Positions 14,703 through 45,794 of a DNA stretch of 64,000 nt are shown here, piece by piece (within the stretch, counting starts at the first letter, position 1; the number at the start of each line of letters is the position of its first letter). The stretch spans positions 198,110 to 262,109 of the forward strand of contig NW_003314378.1 in the NCBI RefSeq assembly GCF_000143415.4. Reading direction: 5' to 3'. This stretch comes from Selaginella moellendorffii. Lineage: Eukaryota; Plantae; Lycopodiophyta. The notes under the pieces were generated by a model. That model saw nothing but the letters and a program-made list of their open reading frames with translations, searched no databases and was not told where the DNA came from. A program made the position numbers and the translations under genes.

Positions 14703-14859
14703 ACGTGGCAGCATGCTGTATGATGTGGCAGAGTGGTGCGTTACGTGGCACGGGGGACATTACTTTTTTCCCGTGTGAAAACTTGCGCGCCGGGGCTATG
14801 ACATGGCCAGCTAGGCAGGGAGGAGGACCGTTGGCAGTTGCTGTTGGAATTTACGTGGC
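14703..14859. promoter_or_regulatory. ABRE/G-box cluster (3x ACGTGGC) upstream of the LRR-RLK
   Basis: ACGTGGC at 14703, 14743 and 14853. Confidence 0.45.
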
Positions 14860-22554: not shown

Positions 22555-24427
22555 CTACGCAGCGGCGATGCTTTTCAGGTACGCTTGCCACCCAGCGTTT
22601 CTATACTCGCGAGAGGCCAAGGCAGGATTTTTGGCCTTGATAATTCCCCTACCAACGATGATTATATCACTCTGTCGGTCAGCAATCACCTATAACATCC
22701 ACAGGAAGATTAGCAAATCAACGAACAAAAGAGAAGAAACAAACGAGCAAAGAGAAGAACCGAACGAGCAAAGAGAAGCAACGATCGAGCAAAGAGAAGA
22801 AACGGACGAACAAAACAGAAGAAACGAACGAGCAAACAGAAGAAAACTCTTACATTTTCAGGAGTGTTGTACTGCTGCCCAAGATCATCGCCCCCGGCGC
22901 TCATCTGCACTCCGGGAGTCATGTGGATGAATCCGGGATCCGCAGCTTGAGCCCACGCAGCAGGATTTATGGAGATGAATCCCATGACGAAGTCTGGATT
23001 GTCCGCGGCCATTTTTTCTGCTGCTGCTGTGTACTCGCCCTGTGCTAGAGTTCCTTTGGAGCTCATCTCGGCCAGTAGCAGCAAACCCCGCCCCTTCGCC
23101 AGTCCCTATAGCCAACAAAAGACGTAGAGTTTACCGTGACTGCTTGAAACTTTTTGGGACTTGTAAACCTTGAGCTTGAGACCGTCAATGATTCCAGGGC
23201 CAGGCACTATGTGCGCGTTTGTGATATCCGACCAGTCCACAATCTTAAACGGACCTCTACAAAGAAAAACTCTGCTTTGAGTACAAAAACATCAAAAGTA
23301 AAAAGGATTGTATCTTACCCCTCGTACTGCATAGAAACCGTGTTGCCGATATCAGCAAACTTCCGGTCCTCAAAGATCATAAAATCGTGCTTCTCCGCAA
23401 TCTGCAAACACACATTTTGTATATCAGAGGCCAAAAGGACACGAGAAGGAAGAAACAATAGACTCACCGCACGAAGCTTGACTGTGAGCTCCTCGCTAAA
23501 ATCCGAGAGCACATCAACGTGCGTCTTGAGCACGCATATCTCAGGCCCGACCTGTATGACCATCACAAACCTTGGATTCAGTGACAAACAAAACAAAGAA
23601 AGACAAAACGAACTCACAGCGTCGGCGAGCTTGAGAAGCTCCTCGGACGTCGCGACGTCCGCCGCAACACTCAAGTTACTCTTCTTCCGCTCCATGAGCT
23701 CCAAGAGTTTCTTCCCAGCAGCATTCTGCGCGAGCACGGCCCTTTCTCCATACGCCAACCTCTTTGGCTTCTTGGCGGCGACAAGAGAAGAAGCTCCAGG
23801 AGGATTTGCAGGAAGCTCCGCCCTGTTAGATCGAACAAAGCTCTTCACGGACGCCGCCACCTCCTCGCTCACTCTCCCATGCTTCACCAGAACATCCACC
23901 GCGTAGCTCAGAGTGATGGCGGAGTGGAGCCTCAATCCATGCTTGCGAAGGTTGTCGCCGCCACCCTGCTCTCTATCGATCAACACCACCACGTCCGAGA
24001 CCTTAAGCCCGGCGGCGGTGAGAGGCTCCACGGTCTCCAGCACCGATGCGCCGCTCGTCACTAGATCCTCGATCACCAGGCACGACTGGCCGCTGGAGAA
24101 GAAGCCCTCGATCGCCTTGCGGGTGCCATAGTCCTTGACCTCCTTGCGGCGCATCACCATTGGCACATTGTGCGCGAGGGAGATGCACGTCGCGATGGGC
24201 AGCGCGGTGTAGGGGACGCCGCAGATGAGGTCGAACGGGGCGGCGGGGGCGGCGGCGGCGGACCAGAGCGCGGCGGAGACCTGGCGGAGCAAATCAGGGT
24301 AGGAGACGATCACCCGGAGATCGATGTAGATTGGCGAGATGATGCCACTCTTGAGCTTGAACTCGCCGAATTTCACCGCCTCCGCGTCCGCGAGCGCAAG
24401 GACCAGCGCCGCCGCCTCCTCCCGCAT
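22555..24427 (-). CDS. UMPS: Bifunctional UMP synthase (OPRT + OMP decarboxylase)
   Basis: [51 protein letters not shown] and DIIIVGRG; ends KSIAAA*. Confidence 0.96.
22720..22847. repeat. ~21-bp minisatellite (~6 units) in the last UMPS intron
   Basis: Units like aacgagcaaagagaagaaccg. Confidence 0.85.
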
Positions 24428-25095: not shown

Positions 25096-25097
25096 AT

Positions 25098-25652: not shown

Positions 25653-25705
25653 TAACGGGCTGGCCCATTAACTTGATCTAGCCATTGGCAGCTGTCAGAT
25701 CGAGT

Positions 25706-27508
25706 TGTAAGCGACTAAATTTTCCATTCTACTTTAGTCACTTAACCACACCTCTGACCACTTGGAGGAGTCTCATTCACAACCTCCATAAGTCCAATCC
25801 AGGACTTGGGACTTGCTAGCCCCGAGAATGGCATCCATGCCACTCAACATTTGCACTTGGTCCAAGTGCTCCACGTGTCCGATCCCATGACCGACACTCA
25901 AAGGTACCACCGACATAGCAGCCCGTTACGCTAAGGCCATGCCCAATCACCTTTGCCACACTGGTAGTCCAATACCACTTGCATCACCGTCTTGGCTCTC
26001 CAAGACTAGGAAAACCATCCGTGAGTGGTCATCTCAGATCCACTCCTTAGCATCCTTAGGATGCCCACCGACAAGGGGAATAGCCTTCCCCAATATCCCT
26101 CTGTCAGTCCCCACTAAGTCCCTTTCTGCCCTTGGCCGTGTTTGCCAACACTGCCACTGGATCGAGACCCACAGGCCCGACCACTAAGTCCCACGGTCCT
26201 CTGGGACTTCCTCACCACATGACTGTGTCCTTGGTCACTACCCCAGAGGACTGCTCCTCTTCCTTTCCACAGTCTGGGCCTTTGGGACAACATTTCGGAA
26301 CACCGTGGCCTTACGCGAGCCACCTGGGTACTCTCCTCGCCTTCTGTCCTTGGGTGCTCTAGCCATGGGCTTAGAGCGGGTTCCATTGAGCCACGACAGG
26401 TATCCAAGTAGGTAGTGCCACCCACACTTGGACTGGGAGCATCGGCCAGTCGATCTCCCGGGGGAACTAGAGCCGGCTCTTGAACACTTCACCAAGCTAC
26501 CCCGCTTGTCGGTCTGTGTTCACTCTAGTCTTGGACTTCCCAGTGGGCAGCTCATCACCCAACACTGGGTCCGGCCTTCCTGGGCCAAACTGGCCTTTCC
26601 TGGCCAAACTGGCTCCACTGCAGTCCTCCCCCTACTATACTTTTGGAGCTCACCAAACCCCCCAGGGTCTGGGAGACGAACGCTTTGGGCTTTCACCCTC
26701 TCAGGCTTCGAACTCGGACTCGGACTCGGACTCGGACTCGGACTCGGACTCGGATTCGGACTCGGACTCGGACTCGGCCTCGGCCTCGGTCTCGGTCTCG
26801 GTCTCGGTCCCGATCTCGGTCTCGGTCTCGGTCCCGGTCTCGGTCTTGGTCCCGGTCTCGACTTCGGACTCCATCTCGGACTCCATCTCGGACTCCATCT
26901 CGGACTCCATCTCGGGTCCGTCTCGGACTCCATCTCGGACTCCATTTCGGGTCCATCTCGGGTCCACCTCGGACTCCATCTCGGACTCCATCTCGGACTC
27001 CATCTCGGGTCCATCTCGGACTCCATCTCGGGTCCATCTCGGACTCCATCTCGGACTCCATCTCGGGTCCATCTCGGGTCCACCTCGGACTCCATCTCGG
27101 ACTCCATCTCGGACTCCAACTCGGGTCCATGTCGGACTCCTCTTCGGACTCCAACTCGGGTCCATCTCGGCCTCCACGTCGGACTCCAACTCGGGTCCAT
27201 CTCGGACTCCACGTCGGACTCCAACTTGGGTCCATCTCGGACTCCACTTCGGACTCCAACTCGAGTCCATCTCGGACACTTCCACGTGTCATGTGTTGGT
27301 CCTTTTGGGTCCCTTTTTGGAGCCTCGCTTTTTGCTCGCTTCGTGCTCGTTCCTCGAGCACTTCGTTGGGAGTTCCACTCCCGCTCTTGACTTTTCAAGT
27401 CGGAGCTTTTGGTCCAAACGTGTTACGCTTGTTTGGCTTTCGCTTCGGCCACTACCACGTGGCACCCTTCCAGCTCCACTTTGGGGCCTAGGGATTTTGT
27501 GTCTCACA
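25706..27508 (-). repeat. 3' LTR (1803 bp) containing 6/12-bp minisatellite ~26710-27280
   Basis: Near-identical to 31563-33329; (ctcgga)n, (ctcggt)n and ctcggactccat/ctcgggtccat arrays. Confidence 0.93.
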
Positions 27509-30500: not shown

Positions 30501-31562
30501 CATTTGGTGTCTCCACACCATCGGCTCCACGAGCCTACCTCTATGACATTTCCCCTTCGTGTCTAAGTCTTTGCCAAGACCAACACCGCTCTTTCTCATG
30601 CCAACCATCTGTTAGCATTGCACCATAGAGGTCACACACAACTTTATGTCAAAGTTGTTTTCTTCTGGGAACACCTTTCCCATAACTTTAGCATGGCACA
30701 TTTTGCCATCGATGAGATACCCTCTGTTCTCATCCTTAGATCCTATGATCCCCCCCCATCCTTTGTGGGGTACAACACACCTCAGTCCAAATGCTTCCAT
30801 CAGTCCTTTTAGGACCATTCCTTGACTCTACTTGAGTCATCCAGCAGTTTTGGACTTGGTTAACCCACAGACCCTTAAGGTCCTACTTGTGAGGCACTAG
30901 CTCACTGGAATACACTTCTTGCATTCCTGTCCTACTCAAAAGAACTATTTTCACAAGTGTTACTCCGACACTTGATTTTGTTCTCTAGGGGCAACTTTTG
31001 CCCCTTATGACTACTTGTCCATGCGATGAGAATACCTCTCATCTCTAAGTACACCCCCCAACTCCTTGGGTTGTTCCAGCATTTATTAAAGGTAGCCCTG
31101 GCTACCATTTCAAGGACTTGAGTCCTCTTCCGTATTTGACCTCTCACGGTCATTACCTCTGGTCTCACATTCATGAGCACCAACCTCAACTATATGAGGA
31201 TAATCTTGTGACTCCTTTATTGTTTTGGAGTCTCTATCTTTCCCGTGATCCCAACTTTAGTTGTTTACCACAACTACCTTAGCCAATTTGCTGAGACAAA
31301 TGCTCATCCGGATCACATCCTCAACTCAATGAGGAAAACCTTGCACTGTTCCCAAGATCCCAAAGTCGTTCCATTATTGGCCCTTTTCTATCCACCACCT
31401 CGTTTACAAGTTCACACATGAACTGTAATGGAGAGCCATGTCTTCCCGACTTGCTACTCCTCAAGGATAAGCCCACTCCTCGGACCTTCCAATGCCAACA
31501 CTAGTGGTGATATACTTGAGCACCAATAAAAGTCGGACTAAGGAACAGCTCCGATACCAAAT

Positions 31563-33329
31563 TGTAAGCGACTAAATTTTCCATTCTACTTTAGTCACTT
31601 AACCACACCTCTGACCACTTGGAGGAGTCTCATTCACAACCTCCATAAGTCCAATCCAGGACTTGGGACTTGCTAGCCCCGAGAATGGCATCCATGCCAC
31701 TCAACATTTGCACTTGGTCCAAGTGCTCCACGTGTCCGATCCCATGACCGACACTCAAAGGTACCACCGACATAGCAGCCCGTTACGCTAAGGCCATGCC
31801 CAATCACCTTTGCCACACTGGTAGTCCAATACCACTTGCATCACCGTCTTGGCTCTCCAAGACTAGGAAAACCATCCGTGAGTGGTCATCTCAGATCCAC
31901 TCCTTAGCATCCTTAGGATGCCCACCGACAAGGGGAATAGCCTTCCCCAATATCCCTCTGTCAGTCCCCACTAAGTCCCTTTCTGCCCTTGGCCGTGTTT
32001 GCCAACACTGCCACTGGATCGAGACCCACAGGCCCGACCACTAAGTCCCACGGTCCTCTGGGACTTCCTCACCACATGACTGTGTCCTTGGTCACTACCC
32101 CAGAGGACTGCTCCTCTTCCTTTCCACAGTCTGGGCCTTTGGGACAACATTTCGGAACACCGTGGCCTTACGCGAGCCACCTGGGTACTCTCCTCGCGTT
32201 CTGCCCTTGGGTGCTCTAGCCATGGGCTTAGAGCGGGTTCCATTGAGCCACACCAGGTATCCAAGTAGGTAGTGCCACCCACACTTGGACTGGGAGCATC
32301 GGCCAGTCGATCTCCCGGGGGAACTAGAGCCGGCTCTTGAACACTTCACCAAGCTACCCCGCTTGTCGGTCTGTGTTCACTCTAGTCTTGGACTTCCCAG
32401 TGGGCAGCTCATCACCCAACACTGGGTCCGGCCTTCCTGGGCCAAACTGGCCTTTCCTGGCCAAACTGGCTCCACTGCAGTCCTCCCCCTACTATACTTT
32501 TGGAGCTCACCAAACCCCCCAGGGTCTGGGAGACGAACGCTTTGGGCTTTCACCCTCTCAGGCTTCGAACTCGGACTCGGACTCGGACTCGGACTCGGAC
32601 TCGGACTCGGATTCGGACTCGGACTCGGACTCGGCCTCGACCTCAGTCTCGGTCTCGGTCTCGGTCCCGATCTCGGTCTCGGTCTCGGTCCCGGTCTCGG
32701 TCTTGGTCCCGGTCTCGACTTCGGACTCCATCTCGGACTCCATCTCGGGTCCGTCTCGGACTCCATCTCGGACTCCATTTCGGGTCCATCTCGGGTCCAC
32801 CTCGGACTCCATCTCGGACTCCATCTCGGACTCCATCTCGGGTCCATCTCGGACTCCATCTCGGGTCCATCTCGGACTCCATCTCGGGTCCATCTCGGGT
32901 CCACCTCGGACTCCATCTCGGACTCCATCTCGGACTCCAACTCGGGTCCATGTCGGACTCCTCTTCGGACTCCAACTCGGGTCCATCTCGGCCTCCACGT
33001 CGGACTCCAACTCGGGTCCATCTCGGACTCCACGTCGGACTCCAACTTGGGTCCATCTCGGACTCCACTTCGGACTCCAACTCGAGTCCATCTCGGACAC
33101 TTCCACGTGTCATGTGTTGGTCCTTTTGGGTCCCTTTTTGGAGCCTCGCTTTTTGCTCGCTTCGTGCTCGTTCCTCGAGCACTTCGTTGGGAGTTCCACT
33201 CCCGCTCTTGACTTTTCAAGTCGGAGCTTTTGGTCCAAACGTGTTACGCTCGTTTGGCTTTCGCTTCGGCCACTACCACGTGGCACCCTTCCAGCTCCAC
33301 TTTGGGGCCTAGGGATTTTGTGTCTCACA
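31563..33329 (-). repeat. 5' LTR (1767 bp)
   Basis: Followed on the - strand by the PBS; 36 bp shorter than its partner, within the minisatellite. Confidence 0.93.
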
Positions 33330-33509
33330 CGAGTTAGGTTCTCTACAAGAATTTTACTATTGTCAGCCACATTCTAGAGAATGTGGCTGACAGCTACCAA
33401 GTTCTGGAGAACATGGCTAACAGCTACCAGATTCTGGAGAACGTGGCTGCTGTCATCCAGGTTCTAGAGAACAAGATCAACGGCATTCTAGGACAATCCT
33501 AGATCAAAT

Positions 33510-34101
33510 GAAGGAGGATCCATCTATAGATAGACAAAATCAAGAGGATTGAGAAGGAAAAACTATGAAATCCAGAGAAAACCAGGAAATGAGGGCAAAC
33601 TGGGATTATCAGCTCTCAAGCTACTCTCGACACACACAAGCTCCTGCTGCCTTGAGCACCATAAGAAACCGCTGCAAAATTCCTGAAACACATGGACAAG
33701 TAGTAGATCTGGATCAATCTAGTTGCTATGCCTCAGATCTGACCTTGGCAAGCTGCTGCCACCCTGCCGCTGCTGCTGACGCCTTGCCACTACTGCTTCT
33801 GCCTTGCCGCTGCCGCTGCCACTTCCGAGAGAATCCAACAGCCTCACGGCATCGGCACAAAAAACCCTAAAACCCTAGAAAACATGTTATATATAACTTT
33901 TAGCCACGTGTTCTATGTTCATTCGACCACTCTCATCCTCGAATAACGTTATTTCATGTGTCTGTTAATGGTCTTGCCACAGCCTGTTAAGGCCGTTCCC
34001 GGCACAGGCTCGCACATTCCCTCCAGAACATGCTCGCCAGGCTAATGCCTGGCTCGCCCGTTCTGGGCGGGAACATGCTCGCCCTACCCAGGAACTCCTT
34101 C
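33510..34101 (-). repeat. Inverted copy of repeat unit A
   Basis: Reverse complement of 25098-25652. Confidence 0.88.
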
Positions 34102-34292
34102 TTCATTTGATCTGAGAGCCAAGTTCTCTAGAACCTAGATGACAGCAGCCATGTTCTCCAGAACCTGGTAGCTGTCAGCCACGTTCTCCAGAATGTGGCT
34201 GACAACAGTAAAATTTTCGCAGAGAACCTGACTCAATCCGATGGCTGCCAACGGCTGGATCAAGTTAATGGGCAAGCCACAGCCCGTTAAGG
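34102..34292 (-). repeat. Inverted copy of unit B (25650-25705 + 33335-33510), lacking the LTR insertion
   Basis: Reverse complement reads ..ggattgagtcaggttctct.. versus the reconstructed empty site agatcgagttaggttctct; shares 30-bp subrepeats. Confidence 0.85.
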
Positions 34293-35095
34293 GATCGAAG
34301 GTTGCTGCTAGAAACCCGGGAATCTCCTTGTCGAGATGTATGGGAGATGTGGGAGTACCGCCACCACTTTCCTTGTGTTTAGGGCATGGGATTTGGCTTG
34401 GGCAAAGGGGAAAATTATTACATACAGAGTACTTCATGTCAGCCGTTGATCCACCAAAATACCATATCGGGCCGTCCGACGACATAAAGGAAAGACCGTG
34501 ATTCGAGTTTTAATGCCAACCTTTTAATCTAAAGTCTAGAGCTCCCAGATCTTGCGCGTGCCCGATTCCAGAGGCTCGTCAAGGTAGTGGATAGATCGCC
34601 ATCATCTCCGTCTGTCGATGCACGGATTGCTTTCAAGGAGGAAGCGGCAGCACTGCTTCTTGGATCGGAGCTATGCGGGTGGCAACTTGTGGTGACTACT
34701 GTGGCGTCGCGGCTGCCCAATTCAAATACGCAGCTGGATGCCACAGCTTTTGAGGCGAGTCTTCACAGCTATCTCGAGGCGTGGCAGATGCTCTCCAAGC
34801 TGAGGGTGTGATATTTCACTGTGTTCTTTCATCTCGATCGAGGGTTTGGAAAATATTTTGTGTTCTTGATCTTCTTTCTCATTCAATATTTCTGTCTAAT
34901 CTATCTGTCCTGTGTGCAGAAAGGCCGATTTCTGTCTAATCCATCTGTCCTGTGCGCAGAAAGGCCGATCTCTGTGTTGCTTTTCGACAGATCAGCATTC
35001 CATAATCCCTTGAGAGACGACGACAAATCCATTATGGTTGTGGTGGCGGCCGTTTTCGACAAACTGGTTGTTGATAACAGTAGTGAGTTTTGATC

Positions 35096-35984
35096 TGCTC
35101 CAGTTGGTTGCGGTAGTGGGATGTCCCAATCGATCTGGTGTGTTACTTTGTTTCACTTGCATTGTAATAGATTGATGGAACTCTTTTTTTTCTCTCTCTC
35201 TCACTTTCAGCCCAAGAGGAGGTTGAACATCTTGTCACTTTGCTGCTAAGCGAATATGACGAAACAAGCTCAAGAAAACTTAATTAATGGACTTACTCCA
35301 AAACGTTTTGTGGGATCTTTGTGACACTTTTGCGTCACATCCCATCCTTGTTCAAGATGTGCAAATTACCAAAGTTACCAAGGTAAAAAATTATAAAGAG
35401 AAAAATGCTGATTCCATTGATCATCACAAGGAGTTGTTGGACATTGCGAAAGATTGCATAATGTAAATCATTGTTGCCAAGTTTGTATTCACAAATGCTC
35501 TAAAGGATTACAACATCAATGTTTTGCCAGATTATAATATTAACTAACAAGTCATGTAAAGTGTTGATCATAATTAGTGTTGTGATTTGGCAAAACATTG
35601 ATGTTGTAGACCTCTAGAGCACTTGTGAATACAAACTTAACAGCAGTGATTTGTATGGTGCAAGCTTTTGCAATGTCCAACAGTTTCTCATCATGATTAA
35701 TGGAATTAACATTTTTTTCTTCAAATTTTTTTACCTTCGTAACTTTGGTAACTTACACGTCTTGGACAACAAGGATAAGATGCAAGGAGAGAATGTGACA
35801 GAGATCCCATAGAACAAGCTTGTTTTGTCATATTTGCTTAGTGGCAAAATGACAAAATGTTCAACTTTCTCTTTGGCAGGAAAAAAAACAAAAAAAAAAT
35901 TCCATCAATCTATTATAATGCAAGTGAAATGAAATAATGTACCAGATCAACTGGGACATCCCACTACCACAACCAGCTGCAGCA
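35096..35984. repeat. Long foldback inverted repeat (~440-bp arms, ~50-bp spacer); MITE/hairpin-like
   Basis: ggtagtgggatgtccca (35112) / tgggacatcccactacc (35952); caacatcaatgttttgcca (35511) / tggcaaaacattgatgttg (35588). Confidence 0.88.
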
Positions 35985-36537
35985 CAATATGAACCAATTA
36001 AGCTGTAATGTTGTTGCTCCAAACCTCCATGCAAACCTCCAACTTGGATTGGAACGTGTACAAGAAATCCAGCACCAGGAACCCTCCAGCTCGAAATGTT
36101 GGTCTACTCCTCTTGTTGTGCTGGTTGGAATGCCGGAGCTCCATCCGATGTCGTTCCGCACAGACCAGCCGCTGATCAACACCCTGGCACTCCCCAAATT
36201 CTCCAAGGTGGCTGCGATTGGAGACAAGGGAGCTCTGCTCGAGGCTAGGATTCCAGCTCAAATCCAGGGTCCTCACGGCAGATTGGTTCTGCGTATCTTC
36301 GATCGAGAGCAGGAAGCGATCTCGACAATGTCAGGTTCGTTGTCAGGTTCGTCTTTTGTTCTCTGTTTGTTCTCTAACTGAGACGAAATGTTCTAGGAAT
36401 GTGATTCGGGGAAGGAACTCGAGGTCGTGGCGATCGTCCAGCCAACTCTTCACGGTATCTATATACTTTTGTGAGTTCTTTTCTTGCATGTCCTTCTGTT
36501 CAGGTCCAACAGCTGCTCTTCGAAAACGTACAGAGCT

Positions 36538-37015
36538 GCATCATGTCGCCAATCTACATCGATCTCCGGGTGATCGTCTCCTACCCTGATTTGCTCCGCC
36601 AGGTCTCTGCCGCGCTCTGGTCCCCCGGTGCCGCGTTCGGAGCCTCTCACCGATCGCTAGAGAGCAAGGTGGCGGTCGCAAGCATCTACGTGGTGGATCG
36701 ATCCAACAGGGCGGAGCTTCCTCCAAATCCTCCTGGAGCTTCTTCTCTTGTAGCCCAAAAGTTGGCGTATGGAGAAAGGGCCGTGAAGCTCATGGAGCGC
36801 ATGGCGGACGTCGTGAGCTTCTCAAACCTGCCGATGCTGTGAGTTCGTTTTCTCCTTCTTTCTTTCTTTATCACTGATTCCAAGTTTTGTGATGTTTATA
36901 CAGGTCGGGCCTGAGACATGCGTGCTCAAGACGCACGTTGATGTGCTCTCGGATTTTAGCGAGGAGCTCACAGTCAAGCTTCGTGCGGTGAGTCTATTGT
37001 TTCTTCCTTCTCGTG
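36538..37015 (+). pseudogene. Inverted, internally deleted UMPS copy
   Basis: [45 protein letters not shown] and [13 protein letters not shown], with UMPS introns retained. Confidence 0.92.
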
Positions 37016-37024
37016 CTCTTTTCC

Positions 37025-37494
37025 TAGCTGTCCAGAGATCATAAGCTAGAGCTGGAGTCGGAGAGCAGGAGGATCACTGTGGTGGAGACGTGATGAATGT
37101 CCGAGGTGTTTACAATCTCTCCAGAGCCTGGGCGACTTTATCTTCAAGGACAACAGAGAAGTCTCGGCTGAAGAACAGATGATTGTTGCTGTCCCGGAGA
37201 TCAAGGAGGTAGAAGTTGGCGAGGGGGACGAGTTTCTGATCTTTGCGTCGGATGGGATCTGGCAGCCGCGCGAAAACTCGAGCCTGGAAGTTAATGCAGT
37301 TTGTCAGGAACGACAAGAGAATCCCCGAGATAAAGCTCTCGGAAATATGCCTAGATTTTCTAGAGGCTTACATTGCTCGGGGACCTCGCTCGTGTGGTTT
37401 CCAAGAATTAGAAGGCGAGTTTTTCATGGAGGTTCTCGACCCTCGGAAAAGCAGTCGCCACGGGACTGATATGGTTGTCGTCCAGATTTCATAA
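37025..37494 (+). pseudogene. PP2C phosphatase fragment
   Basis: YNLSRA/GDFIFKDN (frameshifted), EEQMIVAVPEIK..DEFLIFASDGIW and DMVVVQI. Confidence 0.75.
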
Positions 37495-37842
37495 GCTCCT
37501 TTCCTGGGGGATCAATTGCTTTTAGCTTGCATTTTGCGGCACTAATTTTCTTTGCTGCTCGTCTCGTTCTTGCTTTCTCGGAACTGTATCCAAGAGGAAC
37601 CAAAGTTAAGACAACACGCAAGAGTAACAAAGACTCACCATCGACTCACTTTTTCCAGCTCTGTCAACCTGCTTCACAGTGCACGTCTGTGGCGGAAACA
37701 GGACGAGCTTGAAACTCGACCACCTGGCATAACATCGAAGTCACGCAGTCAGTCCCTGAAAGAAAGAAGTGAAACTTTCTATGCAGAAAGCTTACGTGTG
37801 TTGGCTTGTTCCAGACGAGGAGCGTTTTGAGTGCCACACGAT

Positions 37843-38862
37843 CTACGTAACTTCCACCCCGACCCGGTCACACTCCATCAATGTCCCCGCCTGGTCACAC
37901 ATTGCTCGTTCTCGCACGTCGGACACCGCCTTGAGATAGCTGTACCTTAGCTCCATTCCATCCCACAGCCGATGGAAGGCAGTGATGCATTCGCCCCTAT
38001 CCTTTCTATGGTCGCTCCTGGCACTCAAAGCCTCGCTAACCAATCCCAAGTTTGAGTTCCTGGGATCGCCCCAGTCCCTGGGACTGCCCTCCACCAGCAG
38101 CGGACCCTTCTTGCTACGGCTTGAAACCAGGAAGTTCATAGCGATGTCTTCGCAGTTGATAGCATCATCCACGTACTCCTTGACACCAGCCGGCATGGAG
38201 CAAGAGTACAAGTAAAGGTTCTCGGTCGCCAAGATCATGAACTTCGTCAGGAGTATCGAGTACCGGATTGAGCTCTTGGTGTAGATCCATGACTTTGTAC
38301 CCAGCTGGAAAGAGTGAGACCGCGGGAAGAGGCCCACTATCCTGTCTTGATTCTCGGACCACACTTGGAAAGCGAACTTGAGGCTGGATAGGTCCACGCT
38401 GATATCATCGTCACAAACCAAGACCGCCTGCGTGGAAATCTCCTTCCTTGGAAGAAATCTATTGTTGAGGCTGGAGGAAGGCTGGCGGACGAGGTAAATC
38501 GGCGCACCCAAGCTCTCGAGATTGGCGTTGAGCAGCACCTGGTCTGGCGTGGACGCGTTGCCCCAAAGAATGTAGACGGCGTCCACCACAGGCGAGGCGG
38601 AGTACGCCTGTGCGTGCTGCTCCAGGATGTGGATTCTGGCCTCGGAGAAGCCATTCATGAGCACTGTAAGCTGATCGGGGCGAAGATCGATCGATTGCGG
38701 GTACCTATCTCGTTGGCAAACCCCTGTTTCTCCTGCAAGATCTAGGCGCTTACTTGCTGGAGTGGCGGAAAGGAAGAAGAATGCCGCCAATGCTGTGAAG
38801 ATCACGCCAGATCCGAGCAACAGGATGGAGAAGCCCAGGCGCTTTCGCCTCTTTCTTGCCAT
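37843..38862 (-). CDS. Glycosyltransferase family 64 (EXTL-like), intronless
   Basis: Type II TM anchor; QLTVLMNGFSE, SSSLNNRFLP, LVCDDD, YSILLTK and NCEDIAMNF. Confidence 0.92.
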   Translation of the reverse strand: MARKRRKRLGFSILLLGSGVIFTALAAFFFLSATPASKRLDLAGETGVCQRDRYPQSIDLRPDQLTVLMNGFSEARIHILEQHAQAYSASPVVDAVYILWGNASTPDQVLLNANLESLGAPIYLVRQPSSSLNNRFLPRKEISTQAVLVCDDDISVDLSSLKFAFQVWSENQDRIVGLFPRSHSFQLGTKSWIYTKSSIRYSILLTKFMILATENLYLYSCSMPAGVKEYVDDAINCEDIAMNFLVSSRSKKGPLLVEGSPRDWGDPRNSNLGLVSEALSARSDHRKDRGECITAFHRLWDGMELRYSYLKAVSDVRERAMCDQAGTLMECDRVGVEVT

Positions 38863-38971
38863 GGAAATGTTTAGGGTTCCTTGATTGAAGGGATTTTTTG
38901 CTCCTTCGAAATTTTCCCGCCCAAAATACTTTCTCGAAAAAAATTCTAGGGTTCTACGGTGGTTTTGGGCG

Positions 38972-41900
38972 ATGCGAGGGGAGGCGGAGGCGCTGATCGT
39001 GGCGCTCGTCAAGGCGCAGGCGCTTAAGTTCGGTAAGCTCGACAGCGCCAGTCACCCGCCGATCGACATCGATCTTGGAGTGATTTGCTCGTACCCTGAT
39101 TTGCTACACCGGGTTATCGCTGCGCTATGGTCTGCCGTAGCCGAGCGTGCGACGTTCGATATCGTTTGCGCTGCGTCACACACGGCCGGGCCGATCGCAG
39201 TGTGCTTCGCACTCGTTTACAGGGTACCAATGGTGATGAGAAGAAGGGAGGTGACGGACTCTAGAGGCATTGATGGTTCCTTTGAGACTGGCCAAACCTG
39301 CTTAGTGATCGATGATCTACTCACTATCGGGGCTCCGGTGGCCGAAACTGTGGAGCTTCTCAGTGGTGCTGGGCTCAAGGTCTCGGACGTGGTGATCCTG
39401 GTCGATAGAGAAGAAGGTGGTGCCGAGAATCTACGCAAGAGTGGGCTTAAGGTCCACTCGGCCATCACTTGGAGCGACATAAGGGACGTTCATGGGAGAG
39501 TGACTGCCGACGCTGCTCCACCTGGAGAGAGTTTCGTGAGGACGACTTCGACTCAAGCTGATACATCTGTTACAGAGAAGGCATCGCCTCAAGATACGAA
39601 CTCGCGCTTCGTCGACGCAGATACGACTGGATGCGATGATCTCAAAACTCCTGACAATGTTAGTAACTTTTTTTTCTTTTCTCTTACGTCGTTAACTGTT
39701 TGTCTAACTGATGTTCTACAGGTTGTTGGTACAAGTAGAGGTGGCGAAAGGCGTTCTTTTCCCCCTCGTGATGAAGAGGACGATGAACTGTGGATCGTAA
39801 GCGAGAAGCGGAGCACGGGTCGCGAAAGTAAACCAGGGACGGCTGCTAACCAGGTGCAAGTTAACAGTGGCAATTCAAAGAACAAAGCTGTTGGAGCAAT
39901 TGAAACCCGCACTCATGAAGCAGATGATTTGACCTTGAAGACTCCGGAATGCAAGCGGTCGTGGTGGCCTCATGGCAAGGGCGCTAGATCGGAAGTCATT
40001 GATATCAGTGATGAGGAGAGTAATGGGGAGACGTCTATACTAGGTGAGAAGCGCAAGCTGCCATTGAGCTTCACACCTCGAGGGCGTCGGGAGACAGTCG
40101 CAGTGAAGGAAGAACCGGGATGGCGTGGTACGGGTGTAAAGAAGAAAGAGCCTCCCGGGAGCTATGCTCAAACAGCTGCCTGGAATGCAGCAACATCGTC
40201 TTACGGCTGGATAGTTGCTCCAAAGATGGAAGAGGTTTTGCCAATGGACAGAAGGTTTGGTAAGCCGGCATCGTCGGGTTCAGAACCGGGATGGCGGGGT
40301 CCGGGTGTAAAGAAGGAAGAGCCTCCGGGGAGCTATGCTCAAACAACTGCCTGGAATGGAGCAACTTCGTCTTACGGCTGGGGAGTTGCTCCAAAGATGG
40401 AAGAAGTTTTGCTGATGGGCAGAAGGTTTGACCAGCCGGCTTCGTCGGGTTCGTCTGTCCATGCAGGCCCAAAGAAGAAGGAAGAACCAGTTCAGAACAC
40501 GAGCACAAACACAACTCCAAATCAGCCTGCTCAACCGGTGCCCGTGGTTCGCCGGAATGGTCAAGCCAGCATAGCAACTTCGTCTTGCCGCTGGACAGCT
40601 CCTCCAAACAAGGAAGAAGTTTTGCCAACTGGTAGAAGGTTTGATCGGCCGTCGTTGTCGGGTTCGTATGTCCATGCAGGCCCAAAGAAGGAGCCTTTGA
40701 GTCAAGCAACTCCAAAGAAGGAAGAACCAGTTCACAACACGAGCACAAACACAACTCCAAATCAAGCTGCTCAACCGGTGCACGTAGACAAATGTCTTCG
40801 CCGGATCTTGGAGGTACACTTGCACTGACTGCTATTTGGATGTTTACATTTTCTTTTCCCACAGAGAATGATCACTCCTGATACAAACGAAGAGGCCACT
40901 CTAGATGAGGGAATGATGACTATCAATCTTTTGAAACATCAGGTATACTTCAAAATCTTCTATGTTTCACGGGTTTAAAGCGATCTTTGTAGAGAATAGC
41001 TTTAGCTTGGATGGTGAAGAGCGAGGAGCGTGGAAATTGTTCTGGTGGCTTTCTAGCAGATGACCAGGTGAGCCTTTTGTATGTCATATTGGTTGAACGA
41101 TCTCTTTGTCGTTGTCTCTAGGGTCTTGGCAAAACAGTGTCTACGATAGCTCTTATTCTCAAAGCTCGGTCGCCAATTCACCTGCTCAATCCGGAAACAC
41201 AAGCCATTAAACCTGAGATTAAACCTGAGATCAAACCGGAGCTTATGCAGAAGCCGGAGCCAAAAAGAAGGGGTGGCACTCTTGTCGTATGCCCGACAAG
41301 CGTTTTGAGACAGTGGTATCATGAGATCGAGGAAAAAGTTACAGCGGCGGCAAGGCTTTCAACACATATTTATCACGGCGGTAACAGGAAGAGGTGTCCC
41401 TACGAGTTAGCCAAATATGACGTTGTGCTAACCACGTACTCAATTGTAACAAATGAGGTGCCTAAGCCAGATGAGGAGATAGAAGCAGATGAGGAAACGT
41501 ATGCAGACTATGGCAGCAGCTGTTCGCAAGCATTTTCAAATAAGAAGACGAAGAAAAGGACCCCGACTCGTGGGGCAGGACCTCTAGCCGAAGTCAAATG
41601 GTTTCGAGTGGTGTTGGACGAGGCACAGACGATAAAAAATGCAAAAACACTAGCAGCGTACGCTTGCTGGGGACTGAAAGCCGAGAGACGATGGTGTTTG
41701 TCGGGTACACCACTTCAGAATACCATCGACGACCTCTTCAGCTACTTTCGATTCTTGCGCTTCGACCCGCTGGATTCATACTCAACCTTCAAGATAAAGG
41801 TGAAAGAACCAATCTCCCGAGATCCGAGCACAGGATATGCAAAGCTGCAGATGATACTCCAGGTGATTATGCTTCGTCGAACAAAAGGCAAGTTCTCAAT

Positions 41901-43067
41901 CTTTTGACTTAAGAGTGCAGGGGCCAAAGTTTTGATGTTACAGAAACTGTCATTGACGGAAAGCCCATTCTCCAGCTACCTGAAAAACATGTGACCATGC
42001 TACAGGCGGATTTCAGCAAAGAGGAACGCGAGTTCTACGACAGTTTGGAGCAGCGCTCACGCGATAAGTTTCAGGTATTATGTTCATTCCTGAGTTCTAA
42101 ACTTTTTATTTTGCTTTTGTTCCAGAGCTACCAACGACGTGGGACTGTTCAAAAAAACTACGCGAACATCATGGTTTTGCTCCTGCGCCTGAGACAAGCA
42201 TGCTGCCATCGGTCCCTTGTTCCGGAAGATAAAGAGTCAAAAATCGAAGATGAAGAGTCAAACATCGATGCAAAGGAAAACGTATCCATATGCACAATAT
42301 GTGAAGTAAGTGGTAAACGCAGTTGTTTCGTTACTGACGTTTAGTTTGACACTGTCAGGATGCTCCCGAACAGCCTTTTCTTAGCTGCTGTGGTCACGTC
42401 TTTTGCTCCCAGTGCATCTCAGAGAAATTGCTGACAAGCGAGGAATTGGCGGTCAAGTGTCCCGCTCCAGGCTGCTCTTGCACACTAGAGAGCTCTTTGC
42501 TGTCTAGCTTCATGTCCTTGGATTCCAACGGAGGATATGAGTCGTCCTCAAAGATCAATGCCGTCATGGAGCGCCTGATGAATCTTCCCGTGACGAGTCC
42601 TGCAGCAGCCGGGAAGAAAGCTGTTACCGAGAAAGCTCTTGTCTTCTCGCAGTGGACAAGTTTGCTTGATCTGGTCGAGCCTCGTCTGGAAAAGGCCGGC
42701 TTGGAATTCAGAAGGCTCGACGGCACAATGTCGGTCATGGAGCGGGACGCAGCAGTTTGCGAATTCAACGAAAAGCCCGAGGTACACTCGTAGCATCTGT
42801 TTCTCCATATTCTAATCTCTCTTTTTTCTTTTTTGGTTTTCTCTTGGAGGTGTCTGTGATGCTCATGGGCCTTAAAGTTGGAAGCTTGGGCCTCAACATG
42901 GTAGCTGCGTGCCATGTCCTTCTTCTCGACGTGTGGTGGAATCCCACGGTGGAGGATCAGGCCATCGATCGAGCTCATCGCATCGGACAGACCCGGGACG
43001 TTCACGTCACGAGGTTCACTGTGAAGAAAACCATTGAGGACCGGATCCTAGCTTTGCAGGTACCAAA

Positions 43068-43101
<34 letters not shown>

Positions 43102-43250
43102 GACATCAAGATCACTGTGACTGTGTTCTATTTGCACAGGAACAAAAGAAGCAAATGGTTTCGTCGGCATTTGGAGAGAGTGGGGGGAGGAACAATCGAC
43201 GGAACCGGCTCACCATGGATGATCTGCGCTTCCTGTTTACGAGTTATTAA
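38972..43250 (+). CDS. Chimeric OPRT-like domain + repeat linker + RAD5/RIS1(FRG)-type SNF2 helicase with RING finger
   Basis: Exon 1 homologous to the UMPS N-terminus; continuous frame to 40813; spliced LLKHQ|[15 protein letters not shown]|[51 protein letters not shown] and [11 protein letters not shown]; end [13 protein letters not shown]; one GC-AG intron 41888-41943. Confidence 0.82.
43071..43098. repeat. (CT)n microsatellite in the last SNF2 intron
   Basis: Directly visible. Confidence 0.9.
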
Positions 43251-43367
43251 CTTTTCTCTCATGATTTATTAACTTTTCCCGCGACTTTTACTCTGAATTG
43301 TATAGCATTAATTCGAAGTTACGTCTCTATACACTTATTAGGGCTTTGAGGGTGGCGAACTATAGTC

Positions 43368-44566
43368 ATGGGTGAGTTTTCTCTCAGGGAAGCTGCCTAC
43401 CAGATGTGCCAGTTGACCAGGCAGTGCAAGAAGATAGCGGCTTCTTCTCCAGCACCCATGTCCAATTGGAGCCGTGGCCACATTTTGGAGAGGATTTGGG
43501 GGCCTTCATCAACGGGCTGGACAACACGGAGAAGCGGCTATCGACCTTTTTTAGGGAGCGCAATCACCTGCTCGTCGCCTCGGAAGAAAGCATAATGCAT
43601 GCCCTCAACTTCATTGTCCTCCCGGTGGTGGAAGAAATGGCCGAGCAGCTATGCATCCCGTTCTGGTACCGGCACGCTGATGGGAGAGCCTACTGGTTTC
43701 CCACCCAGGTTGTTGTTGACACAAGCACGGCCTCTTCTCCTTTCTCGTGCAAAGGAGCCTCCAGGAACGAACCATCGGGGGTGCATGGGGTCGGACAGGT
43801 AGTCGGGCCCTGGAACGTGGAGCTGACCAAAGTGGGGACTAATGACCGCAGGGTTGAATACCACGTCGAGCGTCTCTTTGGCAGCATGGTGCTGGACTAG
43901 ATGCGGGTGGGCTACATCTCGCACAACGGTAGGAGCTTTCTTGTTCTTCCTTCAAGGACTCAAAGCTTGGATTTGGTGGATGCAAGCAGACTTGGCGGGA
44001 TGTCCGCGCTGAGCATACAGGAGCTCGGACTCACGGGCCGCGTCGCGGGTTGGGCCAGTTTCGGGGACGTCTTGGAGGCGTGTTTCAAGAGCACTGGGAT
44101 CAGGATCGTGCTCAAGACGTTTGATCTGCGGCAGGAGGGCGCGGCAGAGGCCTTTGTGCAGGAGCAGAAGGCCTACATTGCTATGCAAGACCTCTATGGT
44201 GTTTATACGCCAACTTTCTATGGGGTGGGCAGGCTGCCTCACTTCAACGCGGTCTACTTGGCGCTGTCAGATGAGGGCACAAGGAAGCTTGGAGATATCC
44301 GGGTGACAAGGTTCACTCTGGCTGCCTTGAGGTTGGGGCTGTACAAAATCCACACAAGGGGAGTTCTTCATGGGGATCTCAGGAAGCACAACGTGACGAT
44401 TGCTCGCGATGGAGGGCCCCGGTTCCTCGACTTCGACTGCTCTAAGATGCAGCCTAAACGCTGGGAAATGCTGGAGGAGATGAACCAAGTGCAAGAGCTT
44501 CTAGAGGAGGTAGGTTATGAAGAACAAACTAGAGCAGCCACGTTCTCTTTGTTTTCAGCCGAGTAA
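43368..44566 (+). pseudogene. Atypical kinase gene (possible Crinkler-like nuclease-fold + kinase) with one in-frame TAG and a probable 5' frameshift
   Basis: ORFs 43406-43900 and 43901-44566 abut in the same frame; VLKTFD, EQKAY, IHTRGVLHGDLRKHNV and FLDFD. Confidence 0.65.
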
Positions 44567-44661
44567 ATTATGGAAAACCTGGCGAAAAAAAAGAGGGTTT
44601 CACTAGTTTCTGGTAAGTTATGATTTTCTAAATCTTTTTCTAGCAACCTGGAGGCATGGCA

Positions 44662-45025
44662 CCTCCACCAAGGCAATGGTACCTGGCCTTCCATAGGCTG
44701 GTGTGATGGAAGAGACAGTCGTTGAGGAGGTACTCAGTTAGTAGCAGTTTTGTTGGAGGAGACCAGTACATTCTTAGTCACTATTTATCAAACTAGAGAG
44801 ATTCTTATAGCAATTGCCACTCTGCCATCTTGTAAATAGTCCCAGTGGTCCATACACAGTCCTTGTAGACAATAGTTTTGGTTCCTTCCTGTCAGTTCTC
44901 ATACTGCACGGGATGTTTGAGTCAGTCTTGCTGATCACACACCTGTGCTCGAGTCTGGAGAAGGTGCATGTATAAACGAGCATTTCGGTGGGAGTCTTCC
45001 CTCGTCAATTTACTTTGATGTTCAT
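44662..45025 (-). pseudogene. Relic of the LRR-RLK kinase region
   Basis: Colinear deleted copy of ~12383-12855 (ctccaccaaggcaatggta, tttgttggaggagaccagta, acacctgtgctcgagtctggagaagg). Confidence 0.88.
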
Positions 45026-45393
45026 GATAACCATAGCCTTCAGTGACTGCACAGTAGCCTAAATTGTGATTTTTATAAATGCAAAATTCCTTAACTATAT
45101 TCAACAAAACCTTCTACATGTACATGGGAGGGCATATTGATGAGGTCGCAGTGGTCAACCACCATGATGAGAGCGGATATATGGATAGACTTACCTGTTT
45201 CCCAAAAAGACAAATTATAATAATAAAAGATAGAAAAAGAATACTGTATTGTCTTTCATCCTAGCATCCTACTACAGTTCTGCGGTCAAGAAACAGTTGC
45301 TAATTTCTAGAAGAGTCCACATAACGCTAAATTTGAAGTCTCAGCACAATTTTGTATTTAAGCTGGAATAAACTTGAATACAATCCCACATCA

Positions 45394-45794
45394 ATGGCAT
45401 ACTATTTAGCAATCTGTTCTCTGGCTGTGCTTTCAGCTGTGGTACTTCAACAATCTCAAGTCTGTTCCCAAGGTAAATACCAAAGATTTTAAGAGAAATT
45501 AACTTATATATATATACAGATTTGCGAGCAATTGTACAAAGCATATGTGACGAATGTGCTGCAACAAACACTCGAAGAGCATGTGATTTATGCAGTGTTG
45601 TCAAAGGGCCTTCAGATGTGGAAATAGAGTGTTCCGAGCATTGTTATCATCCAGAGAGTTGTAAGCCTTGTGATACTTATAATCAAGCCATGAACATCAG
45701 CTTCTGCAAGAAAATTTGTGGTGAAAATTATCTGGAAAGATTTAAATTGTGCAAGTACTGCCCAGCTGATGCCCCAACTCCAGAACCATATTAA
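45394..45794 (+). CDS. Putative secreted cysteine-rich protein, 117 aa, 2 exons (45394-45472, 45520-45794)
   Basis: Signal-peptide exon MAYYLAICSLAVLSAVVLQQSQVCSQ; phase-1 GT-AG intron joins it in frame to a 12-Cys exon. Confidence 0.7.

What the first reader, a model, noticed from the sequence alone, without database searches (positions are those of the whole stretch)
38972..43250. OPRT (pyrimidine enzyme) domain fused to an intact SNF2-RING chromatin remodeller
Seen: the first ~170 codons are a copy of the OPRT half of the UMPS gene 15 kb away, starting at the equivalent Met ([12 protein letters not shown] vs [12 protein letters not shown]). The frame runs without stops into the helicase-gene exons; the predicted 63-bp intron 39659-39721 is itself in frame. 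In a 60-aa block I count 43 identities, mostly conservative changes, and many synonymous codon swaps, whereas the other UMPS copies in the window are shredded by deletions. The PRPP loop keeps its acidic pair ([10 protein letters not shown] vs [10 protein letters not shown]), but the KLKSG hood and the RKEVKDYG catalytic loop are altered ([14 protein letters not shown]). The helicase motifs and RING are intact. Known: RAD5/RIS1/FRG-type SNF2 proteins act in DNA repair and RNA-directed DNA methylation, and PRT folds are reused as nucleotide sensors (PyrR, PurR). Inference: a lineage-specific chimera under selection, possibly a PRPP/nucleotide-sensing remodeller. I know of no described example.
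Basis: partly seen in the sequence, partly recalled or inferred. Interest (0 to 1): 0.88.

Follow-up and report, generated by a model that had tools for sequence, protein, structure and literature searches.

The report
Dead OPRT domain on SNF2-RING remodeller
In the spikemoss Selaginella moellendorffii, a copy of the first exon of the neighbouring pyrimidine gene UMPS has become the transcribed first coding exon of a SNF2-RING chromatin-remodeller gene, but the copied enzyme domain has lost its catalytic residues and looks like a loosely constrained appendage, not a metabolite sensor.

Summary
Window 38972-43250 (+) is one ten-exon gene. It encodes a 1250-aa protein made of four parts in order: an OPRT-like domain (aa 1-~180), a ~400-aa domain-free linker, an SNF2 ATPase N-lobe, then a RING finger and Helicase_C.

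All nine introns come from RNA joints or canonical splice sites. One RNA contig runs from 38948 through the OPRT-like exon and across the 63-nt intron into exon 2. At least six RNA runs from two studies hold exon 1.

The window is S. moellendorffii scaffold GL377682.1. The other haplotype (GL377681.1) also keeps the whole frame (1246 aa).

The OPRT-like exon is a local inverted duplicate of UMPS exon 1 and is sister to the Selaginella UMPS. Nearly all the protein change lies on its own branch. Pairwise dN/dS is 0.16-0.27 (bootstrap 0.165-0.39), so the amino-acid sequence was constrained.

It differs at 11 of the 26 most conserved OPRT positions, including the catalytic-loop lysine. The haplotypes differ by a 4-codon deletion in the hood and by Thr-to-Ala in the PRPP loop. 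It is therefore almost certainly not an enzyme, and the PRPP-sensor idea is weakly supported.

I found no relative and no paper with this architecture. It is a real lineage-specific chimera of moderate interest.

The parts
38948..38971 (+). Minimal 5' UTR. The transcript start lies at or upstream of 38948, about 85 nt from the divergent GT64 start codon, so the two genes share a compact bidirectional promoter region.
   Evidence: RNA contig X2 record 7 begins at 38948. No ATG lies on the + strand between 38870 and 38972 (read).
38972..39658 (+). Exon 1 (aa 1-229). The OPRT-like domain covers aa 1-~180 (38972-~39511); the remainder is a short linker.
   Evidence: homology to UMPS exon 1. (human OPRT domain 2wns, 2.3e-33). 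(AF2 pLDDT 90.7; best PDB fold match 2wns, TM 0.8). (RNA contig 38948-39658 joined to 39722-40186).
39659..39721 (+). Intron 1, 63 nt, GT..AG. It is in frame in this haplotype and 62 nt long in the other.
   Evidence: Joint 39658>39722 in contigs of X1 and X2. 1-nt deletion at 39668 in haplotype 2.
39722..40813 (+). Exon 2 (aa 230-593). Low-complexity linker without a known domain. It contains a 171-nt tandem duplication at 40111-40452.
   Evidence: No Pfam family. TRF. Haplotype differences 10 nonsynonymous: 2 synonymous over aa 181-593.
40865..41067 (+). Exons 3 (40865-40942) and 4 (40993-41067): the start of the SNF2 region.
   Evidence: Joints with GT..AG ends in RNA contigs and reads.
41122..41887 (+). 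Exon 5: SNF2 ATPase N-lobe (GLGKT, DEAQ, SGTPLQN). It is followed by a GC..AG intron at 41888-41943.
   Evidence: PF00176 3.3e-43. RAD5 6l8n 2e-22. Joints.
41944..42305 (+). Exons 6 (41944-42074) and 7 (42126-42305). The end of exon 7 carries the first C-x2-C of the RING.
   Evidence: Joints; translation.
42359..42781 (+). Exon 8: the rest of the RING finger and the start of Helicase_C.
   Evidence: zf-RING_UBOX 25.9 bits (cut-off 25.2), zf-C3HC4 22.4 (cut-off 21), Helicase_C.
42850..43250 (+). Exons 9 (42850-43059) and 10 (43140-43250, with stop TAA at 43248-43250): the end of Helicase_C (motif VI) and the C-terminus.
   Evidence: Helicase_C 3.6e-09. Joint 42778>42847. The last intron (43060-43139) is inferred from canonical sites and the frame, because reads are cut at the CT repeat there.
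22700..24427 (-). Parent gene UMPS (OPRT + OMP decarboxylase). Exon 1 starts at ATG 24427.
   Evidence: The haplotype-2 copy is annotated as 483 aa with Pribosyltran + OMPdecase.
36498..37023 (+). Second, younger and fragmented UMPS copy, a pseudogene piece about 92% identical in DNA to UMPS.
   Evidence: tblastn; blastn.
37843..38862 (-). Single-exon GT64 glycosyltransferase gene, head-to-head with the chimera. The two ATGs are 110 nt apart.
   Evidence: PF09258 5e-69. Exact match to the annotated protein. RNA on the opposite strand.

Best explanation
This is a real, expressed chimeric gene of Selaginella moellendorffii.

Origin. A local inverted duplication copied the 5' part of UMPS exon 1, from the start codon on, to a spot across the GT64 gene. 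The parent UMPS lies only about 4.4 kb away in the haplotype that lacks the transposon insertion. A new GT donor at 39659 splices the copy in frame onto a Rad5/16-group (Ris1/FRG-like) SNF2-RING ATPase gene. The copy now supplies that gene's first AUG and shares a promoter region with GT64.

Product. The protein is 1250 aa: OPRT fold, about 400 aa of disordered linker, SNF2 N-lobe, RING, Helicase_C. The remodeller/E3 part is under clear purifying selection and presumably does the work. That work is ATP-dependent DNA translocation plus ubiquitin-ligase activity, as inferred from the family.

The OPRT-derived domain. It most likely still folds like OPRT but is catalytically dead. It has been kept under relaxed purifying selection, probably as a folded N-terminal module. 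It could be a dimerisation or interaction surface, since type I PRTs are dimers, but this is inference and untested. It is probably neither an enzyme nor a specific PRPP sensor.

Shown: the gene structure, transcription and splicing, intactness in two haplotypes, origin from UMPS, loss of conserved active-site residues, and dN/dS below the neutral expectation.

Inferred: retention of the fold, absence of catalysis, and the role of the domain.
For: Transcription and splicing. RNA contig 38948-39658|39722-40186; contig depth on exon 1 (12.5 and 5.9) is similar to the helicase exons (10 and 8.8); all other joints are canonical; exon 1 is held in >=6 RNA runs of two studies.

Gene model; a clean 1250-aa ORF.

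Haplotypes; the window is GL377682.1; the other haplotype, GL377681.1, keeps the frame (1246 aa).

Origin; homology runs from the ATG to about codon 178 only; the copy is sister to Selaginella UMPS (SH-aLRT 100), with a stem of 0.81 against 0.001 for UMPS; 45 changes on the copy branch against 5 on UMPS.

Constraint; dN/dS is 0.26 (NG86), 0.27 (LWL85) and 0.16 (ML), with bootstrap 0.165-0.39; substitutions are more conservative than the mutational null (6/1000).

Loss of function; 11 of 26 near-invariant OPRT columns are lost. Pfam Pribosyltran scores only 16.1 bits against a cut-off of 26.3.

Fold and domains; the model has the OPRT fold. SNF2, RING and Helicase_C; haplotype N:S in the helicase part is 2:5.
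Against: Continuity of a single transcript from exon 1 to the last exon rests on overlapping short-read contigs, not on one long molecule.

No protein-level evidence exists.

The fold prediction used an alignment of true OPRTs, so it would return an OPRT fold almost regardless.

The dN/dS estimates are near saturation (dS 1.0-1.7), and GC3 has shifted (0.63 against 0.86). The average constraint could equally reflect an early period as a working OPRT duplicate followed by neutral drift.

Present-day polymorphism in the domain (2 nonsynonymous, 1 synonymous, one 4-codon deletion) does not show constraint.

The two raw-read RNA runs (X14, X15) gave no read on exon 1. They gave almost none on the helicase exons either, and their reads at 40020-41400 carry the differences of a paralogous fragment.
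Confidence: 0.78

Rival explanations
1. Passenger exon. The OPRT-derived exon is translated only because it brings the promoter and the first AUG. Selection keeps just the reading frame, for the sake of the downstream remodeller, and the domain itself is decaying without function.
For: Near-invariant OPRT columns changed as often as ordinary ones (35% against about 40%). All indels being in frame is expected under frame-only selection. The hood deletion and T118A are polymorphic, and domain N:S is 2:1. The adjoining linker evolves at N:S 10:2.
Against: Pairwise dN/dS is 0.16-0.27, with an upper bootstrap bound of 0.39, below the ~0.5 expected if the copy were neutral. Substitutions are biased towards conservative ones. 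Detectable homology ends where the domain ends, and both the upstream sequence and the 3' continuation have decayed beyond recognition.
Confidence: 0.3
2. The OPRT-derived domain is a PRPP/OMP/nucleotide-binding sensor that couples pyrimidine status to remodeller activity, as PRT folds do in PyrR and PurR.
For: An OPRT fold is predicted. The acidic pair of the PRPP loop, the Gly of the loop and the Arg of the D-R-E-x-G-G motif are kept. Amino-acid constraint is present.
Against: The hood Lys>Asp, Tyr>Asp and Arg>Gly in the S-P-I-Y-I-D-L-R motif, the catalytic-loop Lys>Thr with a 3-aa deletion, and the PRPP-loop Ser>Pro. The PRPP-loop Thr118 is Ala in the other haplotype, and four hood residues are deleted there. 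The Pfam PRT score is below the cut-off.
Confidence: 0.07
3. Two separate transcription units: an OPRT-like gene ending inside exon 2, and a remodeller gene starting from an internal promoter. On this reading the fusion exists only as an open frame.
For: No single record spans the whole gene, because contigs break in the 171-nt repeat of exon 2. The deposited gene models start at Met87 and are clearly unreliable.
Against: Overlapping RNA contigs tile 38948 to the 3' end at even depth. No stop interrupts the frame, and the next in-frame Met after exon 1 is at aa 398. No terminator-like break or depth step is seen in exon 2.
Confidence: 0.07

Closest known systems
[quoted passage not shown]
   Same: SNF2 N-lobe, a RING finger inserted before Helicase_C, no HIRAN domain, and a long variable N-terminus. 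An Atlas lead names a 'CHR28' cluster. The family and its roles in RNA-directed DNA methylation and immunity are as summarised in PMC8171942.
   Different: It carries an OPRT-derived domain at the N-terminus, which I found in no other member. Orthology to a particular FRG gene was not tested.
UMP synthase (OPRT + OMP decarboxylase), the parent gene 4-15 kb away
   Same: The first ~180 residues are homologous (57% identity) and begin at the same Met. The predicted fold matches the human OPRT domain 2wns.
   Different: It has no OMP decarboxylase half. 11 of 26 near-invariant OPRT positions are changed, there is a 3-aa deletion in the catalytic loop, and GC3 has fallen from 0.86 to 0.63.
Other OPRT-domain fusions in the protein library (DHODH-OMPdecase-OPRT, OMPdecase-OPRT)
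   Same: The OPRT domain occurs as one module of a multidomain protein.
   Different: Those fusions join enzymes of the same pathway and keep a Pfam-significant PRT domain. This one joins an unrelated chromatin protein to a degenerate domain.
PRT-fold regulators PyrR and PurR (own knowledge)
   Same: A phosphoribosyltransferase fold is reused outside catalysis.
   Different: Those proteins retain a working PRPP/nucleotide site. Here the ligand-contacting loops are eroded and polymorphic.
RAD5 / HLTF
   Same: SNF2 + RING + Helicase_C. RAD5 (6l8n) is among the best solved-structure matches.
   Different: There is no HIRAN domain (no Pfam hit in exon 2).

Membership tests
Orotate phosphoribosyltransferase (type I PRT, PyrE / UMPS N-domain) | Sequence and fold homology to OPRT | tested here: met
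   57% identity to the S. moellendorffii UMPS; human OPRT domain 2wns 2.3e-33; model TM 0.8 to 2wns.
Orotate phosphoribosyltransferase (type I PRT, PyrE / UMPS N-domain) | Pfam PF00156 at or above the gathering score | tested here: not met
   16.1 bits against a cut-off of 26.3.
Orotate phosphoribosyltransferase (type I PRT, PyrE / UMPS N-domain) | Conserved lysines of the flexible catalytic loop (R-K-E-x-K-D-x-G) | tested here: not met
   [11 protein letters not shown] > RREVTD---SR. The Lys conserved in 95% of 113 domains is Thr, and the Gly conserved in 96% is deleted.
Orotate phosphoribosyltransferase (type I PRT, PyrE / UMPS N-domain) | Hood motifs (F-x-L-K-S-G and S-P-I-Y-I-D-L-R) | tested here: not met
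   K>D, G>A, S>P, Y>D and R>G, plus a 2-aa deletion. Four more residues are deleted in haplotype 2.
Orotate phosphoribosyltransferase (type I PRT, PyrE / UMPS N-domain) | PRPP-binding loop (acidic pair followed by T-x-G-x-S/T) | tested here: inconclusive
   [11 protein letters not shown]: the acidic pair, Thr and Gly are kept, but the Ser conserved in 98% is Pro and the Thr is Ala in haplotype 2.
Orotate phosphoribosyltransferase (type I PRT, PyrE / UMPS N-domain) | OPRT activity | not testable with these tools
   Needs an enzyme assay or complementation of a pyrE/ura5 mutant.
SNF2 family, Rad5/16-like group (Ris1/FRG type) | SNF2-related N-lobe with motifs I-III | tested here: met
   PF00176 3.3e-43. 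GLGKT, DEAQ and SGTPLQN are read.
SNF2 family, Rad5/16-like group (Ris1/FRG type) | Helicase_C lobe with motif VI | tested here: met
   PF00271 in exons 8 and 9. [11 protein letters not shown] is read.
SNF2 family, Rad5/16-like group (Ris1/FRG type) | RING finger inserted between the two lobes | tested here: met
   zf-RING_UBOX and zf-C3HC4 score above their cut-offs even on the exon-8 part alone. The C-x2-C of exon 7 completes it.
SNF2 family, Rad5/16-like group (Ris1/FRG type) | Orthology to Arabidopsis FRG1-5, as opposed to Rad16/SHPRH-type members | not tested
   There is only an Atlas lead to a 'CHR28' cluster.
RAD5 / HLTF | HIRAN domain N-terminal to the ATPase | tested here: not met
   No Pfam family in exon 2 or exons 3-4.
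PRT-fold ligand sensors (PyrR/PurR-like) | Intact PRPP/nucleotide-binding site | tested here: inconclusive
   The site is partly kept and partly eroded, and it is polymorphic. Binding itself cannot be tested here.

The most novel reading that the evidence does not exclude
The OPRT-derived domain could be a functional regulatory module. It might bind a pyrimidine-pathway ligand through a remodelled pocket. Alternatively it might pair with the OPRT domain of the real UMPS, since PRT folds dimerise. Either way it would link nucleotide metabolism to a chromatin remodeller/E3 ligase in a lycophyte.
Probability: 0.08. Interest if true: 0.85.

Novelty: new variant of a known kind. Interest (0 to 1): 0.42.

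Why it matters
This is a well-documented case of gene birth by exon capture, and all the pieces sit in one window. The parent gene, a younger dead copy and the captured, transcribed copy all lie within a few kilobases. Two haplotypes and RNA support back the gene model.

It adds a domain combination (OPRT fold + SNF2-RING) that I found in no protein library search and in no paper. It also corrects the deposited gene models, which start inside the domain and run on into the next gene.

Its wider importance depends on whether the domain does anything. The evidence here favours a degenerate pseudoenzyme module, so the metabolic-sensing remodeller idea is possible but unlikely.

Tried and rejected
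1. Raw-read runs X14 and X15 gave zero reads on exon 1. I first read this as possible absence of the exon from transcripts. I rejected that reading for three reasons. These runs have almost no reads on the helicase exons either. Their reads at 40020-41400 are only 95-99% alike. Their odd joints (40915>40991, 41111>41186) fit a partial paralogous copy of window 39950-41461 on scaffold GL377704.1 (L001).

2. The search of 1.84 billion representatives with exon 1 found no protein closer than about 50% identity and none over 841 aa. The longer hits are pyrimidine-enzyme fusions. That list did not show this locus's own deposited 1551-aa model either, so cluster representatives can hide such fusions. 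The blank is therefore weak evidence of absence.

3. The exon-2 search and the exon-1 search at 126-400 aa found no orthologue. The length window of that tool (0.55-1.75x) kept me from retrieving full-length relatives. No stop-free reference longer than 647 aa exists, so the spliced 1250-aa protein could not be handed to any search.

4. The GT64 neighbour search was meant to reach syntenic loci in other species. It gave the other haplotype only, and the next hits are <=60% identical and sit on short transcript contigs.

5. YN00 failed on saturation.

6. Paper searches for OPRT + SNF2, Selaginella + Snf2 + Ris1, and PRT-like pseudoenzyme all returned nothing relevant.

7. Earlier scan notes held nothing on this locus.

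Full report
WHAT IS THERE

The window is Selaginella moellendorffii. Positions 27843-48862 are 100% identical to scaffold GL377682.1 of GCA_000143415.2.

An open frame of 647 codons runs on the + strand from 38885 to 40828. From ATG 38972, its first ~190 codons match the OPRT half of the UMPS gene at 24427..23315 (-). BLASTP gives 57% identity over 187 aa, E 4e-59. At the DNA level, similarity is 70% over 528 nt. It begins exactly at the two start codons and ends near codon 178, with no detectable similarity upstream or downstream. The four indels against UMPS are 6, 3, 9 and 9 nt.

Downstream exons carry SNF2-rel_dom (3.3e-43), a RING finger and Helicase_C. The closest solved relatives of the ATPase lobe are a Sulfolobus SNF2 and yeast RAD5.

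A GT64 glycosyltransferase gene lies head-to-head with the chimera. Its ATG is at 38862 on the minus strand, 110 nt from ATG 38972.

GENE MODEL AND TRANSCRIPTION

I laid two sets of RNA contigs (X1, X2) and two raw-read RNA runs (X14, X15) on 38300-43450.

- One X2 contig of 1176 nt covers 38948-39658 and continues at 39722-40186.
- The same joint is in X1.
- Contig depth on exon 1 (12.5 in X2, 5.9 in X1) is similar to depth on the helicase exons (10 and 8.8).
- Seven further joints have canonical ends, one of them a GC..AG intron.
- The last intron (43060-43139) is inferred from its splice sites and the frame, because reads are cut at a CT repeat there.

Joining these exons gives an uninterrupted 1250-codon frame ending at TAA 43248-43250. 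Motifs GLGKT, DEAQ, SGTPLQN and [11 protein letters not shown] and a C3HC4-type RING are all intact. ATG 38972 is the first ATG downstream of the observed 5' end.

Exon 1 words are held by at least six RNA runs from two studies, all of the same organism.

There is one caveat. Contigs break inside a 171-nt tandem repeat in exon 2, so continuity from exon 1 to exon 10 rests on overlapping contigs, not on one molecule.

THE PUZZLING RAW-READ RUNS

X14 and X15 show no read on 38988-40019. They show almost none on the helicase exons either. Their reads at 40020-41400 are only 95-99% alike and carry non-canonical 'joints'.

A protein search with exon 2 found two S. moellendorffii models on another scaffold, GL377704.1. 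That locus holds a partial copy of window 39950-41461, about 92% identical and with deletions. Those reads come from that paralogous fragment, so they say nothing against exon 1.

THE OTHER HAPLOTYPE

The GT64 neighbour led to the allelic scaffold GL377681.1. It is 98.7% identical over 37031-43358.

Projected onto my exons, its frame is intact and gives 1246 aa. Differences in the OPRT-like domain are:

- a 12-nt in-frame deletion (39047-39058, residues A26-P29 of the hood);
- I64V;
- a synonymous change;
- T118A, which removes the Thr of the PRPP loop.

Counts of nonsynonymous to synonymous differences between the haplotypes:

| Region | Nonsynonymous : synonymous |
|---|---|
| OPRT fold | 2:1 |
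| Linker | 10:2 |
| Helicase/RING part | 2:5 |

Comparing the N-terminal 593 aa with the rest gives Fisher p = 0.05.

Intron 1 is 62 nt in that haplotype. It is therefore not kept as coding sequence.

This haplotype carries a ~10.9-kb insertion (window 24938-35818). It includes an LTR element whose 1.8-kb LTRs are 97.6% alike. Without that insertion, UMPS and the captured exon are only about 4.4 kb apart.

Both deposited gene models (1551 and 1524 aa) start at Met87 inside the domain and run on into the next, kinase-like gene. They are wrong at both ends.

ORIGIN AND SELECTION

In a tree of 48 OPRT domains, the two allelic copies are sister to the S. moellendorffii UMPS (SH-aLRT 100). The copy has a stem of 0.81 changes per site, against 0.001 for UMPS. 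Parsimony against 20 outgroups puts 45 changes on the copy, 5 on UMPS and 29 undecided.

Pairwise dN/dS over 185 codons:

| Method | dN/dS | Notes |
|---|---|---|
| NG86 | 0.26 | dN 0.27, dS 1.0; bootstrap 95% interval 0.165-0.39 |
| LWL85 | 0.27 | |
| ML | 0.16 | dS 1.7 |

If the copy had drifted neutrally while UMPS stayed constrained, the pairwise value should be about 0.5. The interval excludes that. Because almost all protein change is on the copy, its own branch comes out at roughly 0.3-0.5.

The substitutions are more conservative than random nucleotide changes would give. Mean BLOSUM62 is -0.11 against -0.61, and 6 of 1000 simulations reach the observed value.

GC3 has dropped from 0.86 to 0.63, towards the host gene's level. 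The estimates are near saturation. An early period as a working duplicate followed by drift would give the same average.

IS IT STILL AN OPRT, OR A SENSOR?

Among 113 OPRT domains, 26 columns are at least 90% conserved. The real UMPS matches all 26 and the copy differs at 11. In UMPS numbering the changes are:

- hood: K26>D and G28>A;
- S-P-I-Y-I-D-L-R motif: S31>P, Y34>D and R38>G;
- P72>S and Y73>H;
- catalytic loop: K98>T with loss of G101 in a 3-aa deletion;
- E107>D;
- PRPP loop: S128>P.

From my own knowledge of the Salmonella enzyme, the loop lysine corresponding to K98 (K103 there) is needed for catalysis.

The most conserved quartile of columns changed in 35% of cases, no less than the second quartile at 29%. 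The constraint that marks a working active site is therefore gone. Pfam's PRT model scores 16.1 bits against a cut-off of 26.3.

An AlphaFold model built on an alignment of true OPRTs is confident (pLDDT 90.7). Confidence dips at the hood (71) and the catalytic loop (84). The model matches the human OPRT domain 2wns at TM 0.8. Given the alignment used, this shows compatibility with the fold and does not prove that the domain folds.

Three of the four indels against UMPS, and the allelic deletion, fall in loops of that model.

With the PRPP-loop Thr and four hood residues differing between alleles, a specific PRPP or nucleotide pocket is unlikely, though it is not excluded.

COMPARISON WITH WHAT IS KNOWN

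The remodeller part has the architecture of the Rad5/16-like SNF2 group: SNF2 lobe, RING, Helicase_C. No HIRAN domain is found. [quoted passage not shown] An Atlas lead points to a CHR28-named cluster. I did not test orthology.

OPRT domains in longer proteins of the 1.84-billion-protein library are fusions with dihydroorotate dehydrogenase or OMP decarboxylase only. No protein closer to this domain than about 50% identity was found. No paper mentions OPRT with SNF2. These blanks are weak, for two reasons: lycophyte genomes are scarce in the collections, and the representative library did not even list this locus's own deposited model.

VERDICT

It is transcribed, spliced, first-AUG-initiated, intact in both haplotypes, and historically under some amino-acid constraint.

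The functional reading is only partly supported. The domain is best described as a catalytically dead, OPRT-derived N-terminal module under relaxed selection. The sensor idea has a probability of under one in ten.

This is a new domain variant of a known kind of protein and a tidy example of exon capture from a neighbouring gene. It is of moderate interest unless the domain proves to bind something.

Noticed in passing
window 24938-35818 (LTRs about 25705-27508 and 31562-33329): A ~10.9-kb insertion containing an LTR retroelement with 1.8-kb LTRs 97.6% alike. It is present in this haplotype and absent from the allelic scaffold GL377681.1. It pushes UMPS from ~4.4 kb to ~15 kb from the captured exon.
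   Followed up: partly
L001 (GL377704.1:169545-193621) 13636-14804; proteins P0151, P0152: A partial paralogous copy of window 39950-41461 (exon 2 to the start of exon 5, ~92% identical, with deletions). It is built into another chimeric gene model (LOC9630209) and appears to be transcribed, as the X14/X15 reads show. The same scaffold also carries a frameshifted UMPS-like gene (P0012, SELMODRAFT_236575).
   Followed up: partly
window 39230-45627 (deposited model); L002 3236-9633 and L003 3238-9644: The deposited gene models (1551 and 1524 aa) start at Met87 inside the OPRT-like domain. They read past the true stop at 43248-43250 into a downstream ORF with a weak, sub-threshold Pkinase match (43901-44566). 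They need correction.
   Followed up: partly
window 36498-37023 (+): A second UMPS-derived fragment, ~92% identical in DNA to UMPS and broken by deletions. It is much younger than the captured exon and lies on the other side of the GT64 gene.
   Followed up: partly
window 40111-40452 and 41206-41245: There is a 171-nt tandem duplication (2 copies, 90% alike) in exon 2. There is also a 12-nt x3.3 repeat encoding KPEI units inside the SNF2 N-lobe. An alternative GT..AG joint 41064>41248 skips the latter in some contigs and reads.
   Followed up: no
window 41888-41943: A GC..AG intron (56 nt) in the remodeller gene, supported by RNA contigs of two runs.
   Followed up: no
window 38862-38972: Only 110 nt separate the divergent start codons of GT64 and the chimera, and the chimera's RNA starts at or before 38948. 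This is a very compact bidirectional promoter, which the captured exon must have acquired or brought with it.
   Followed up: no
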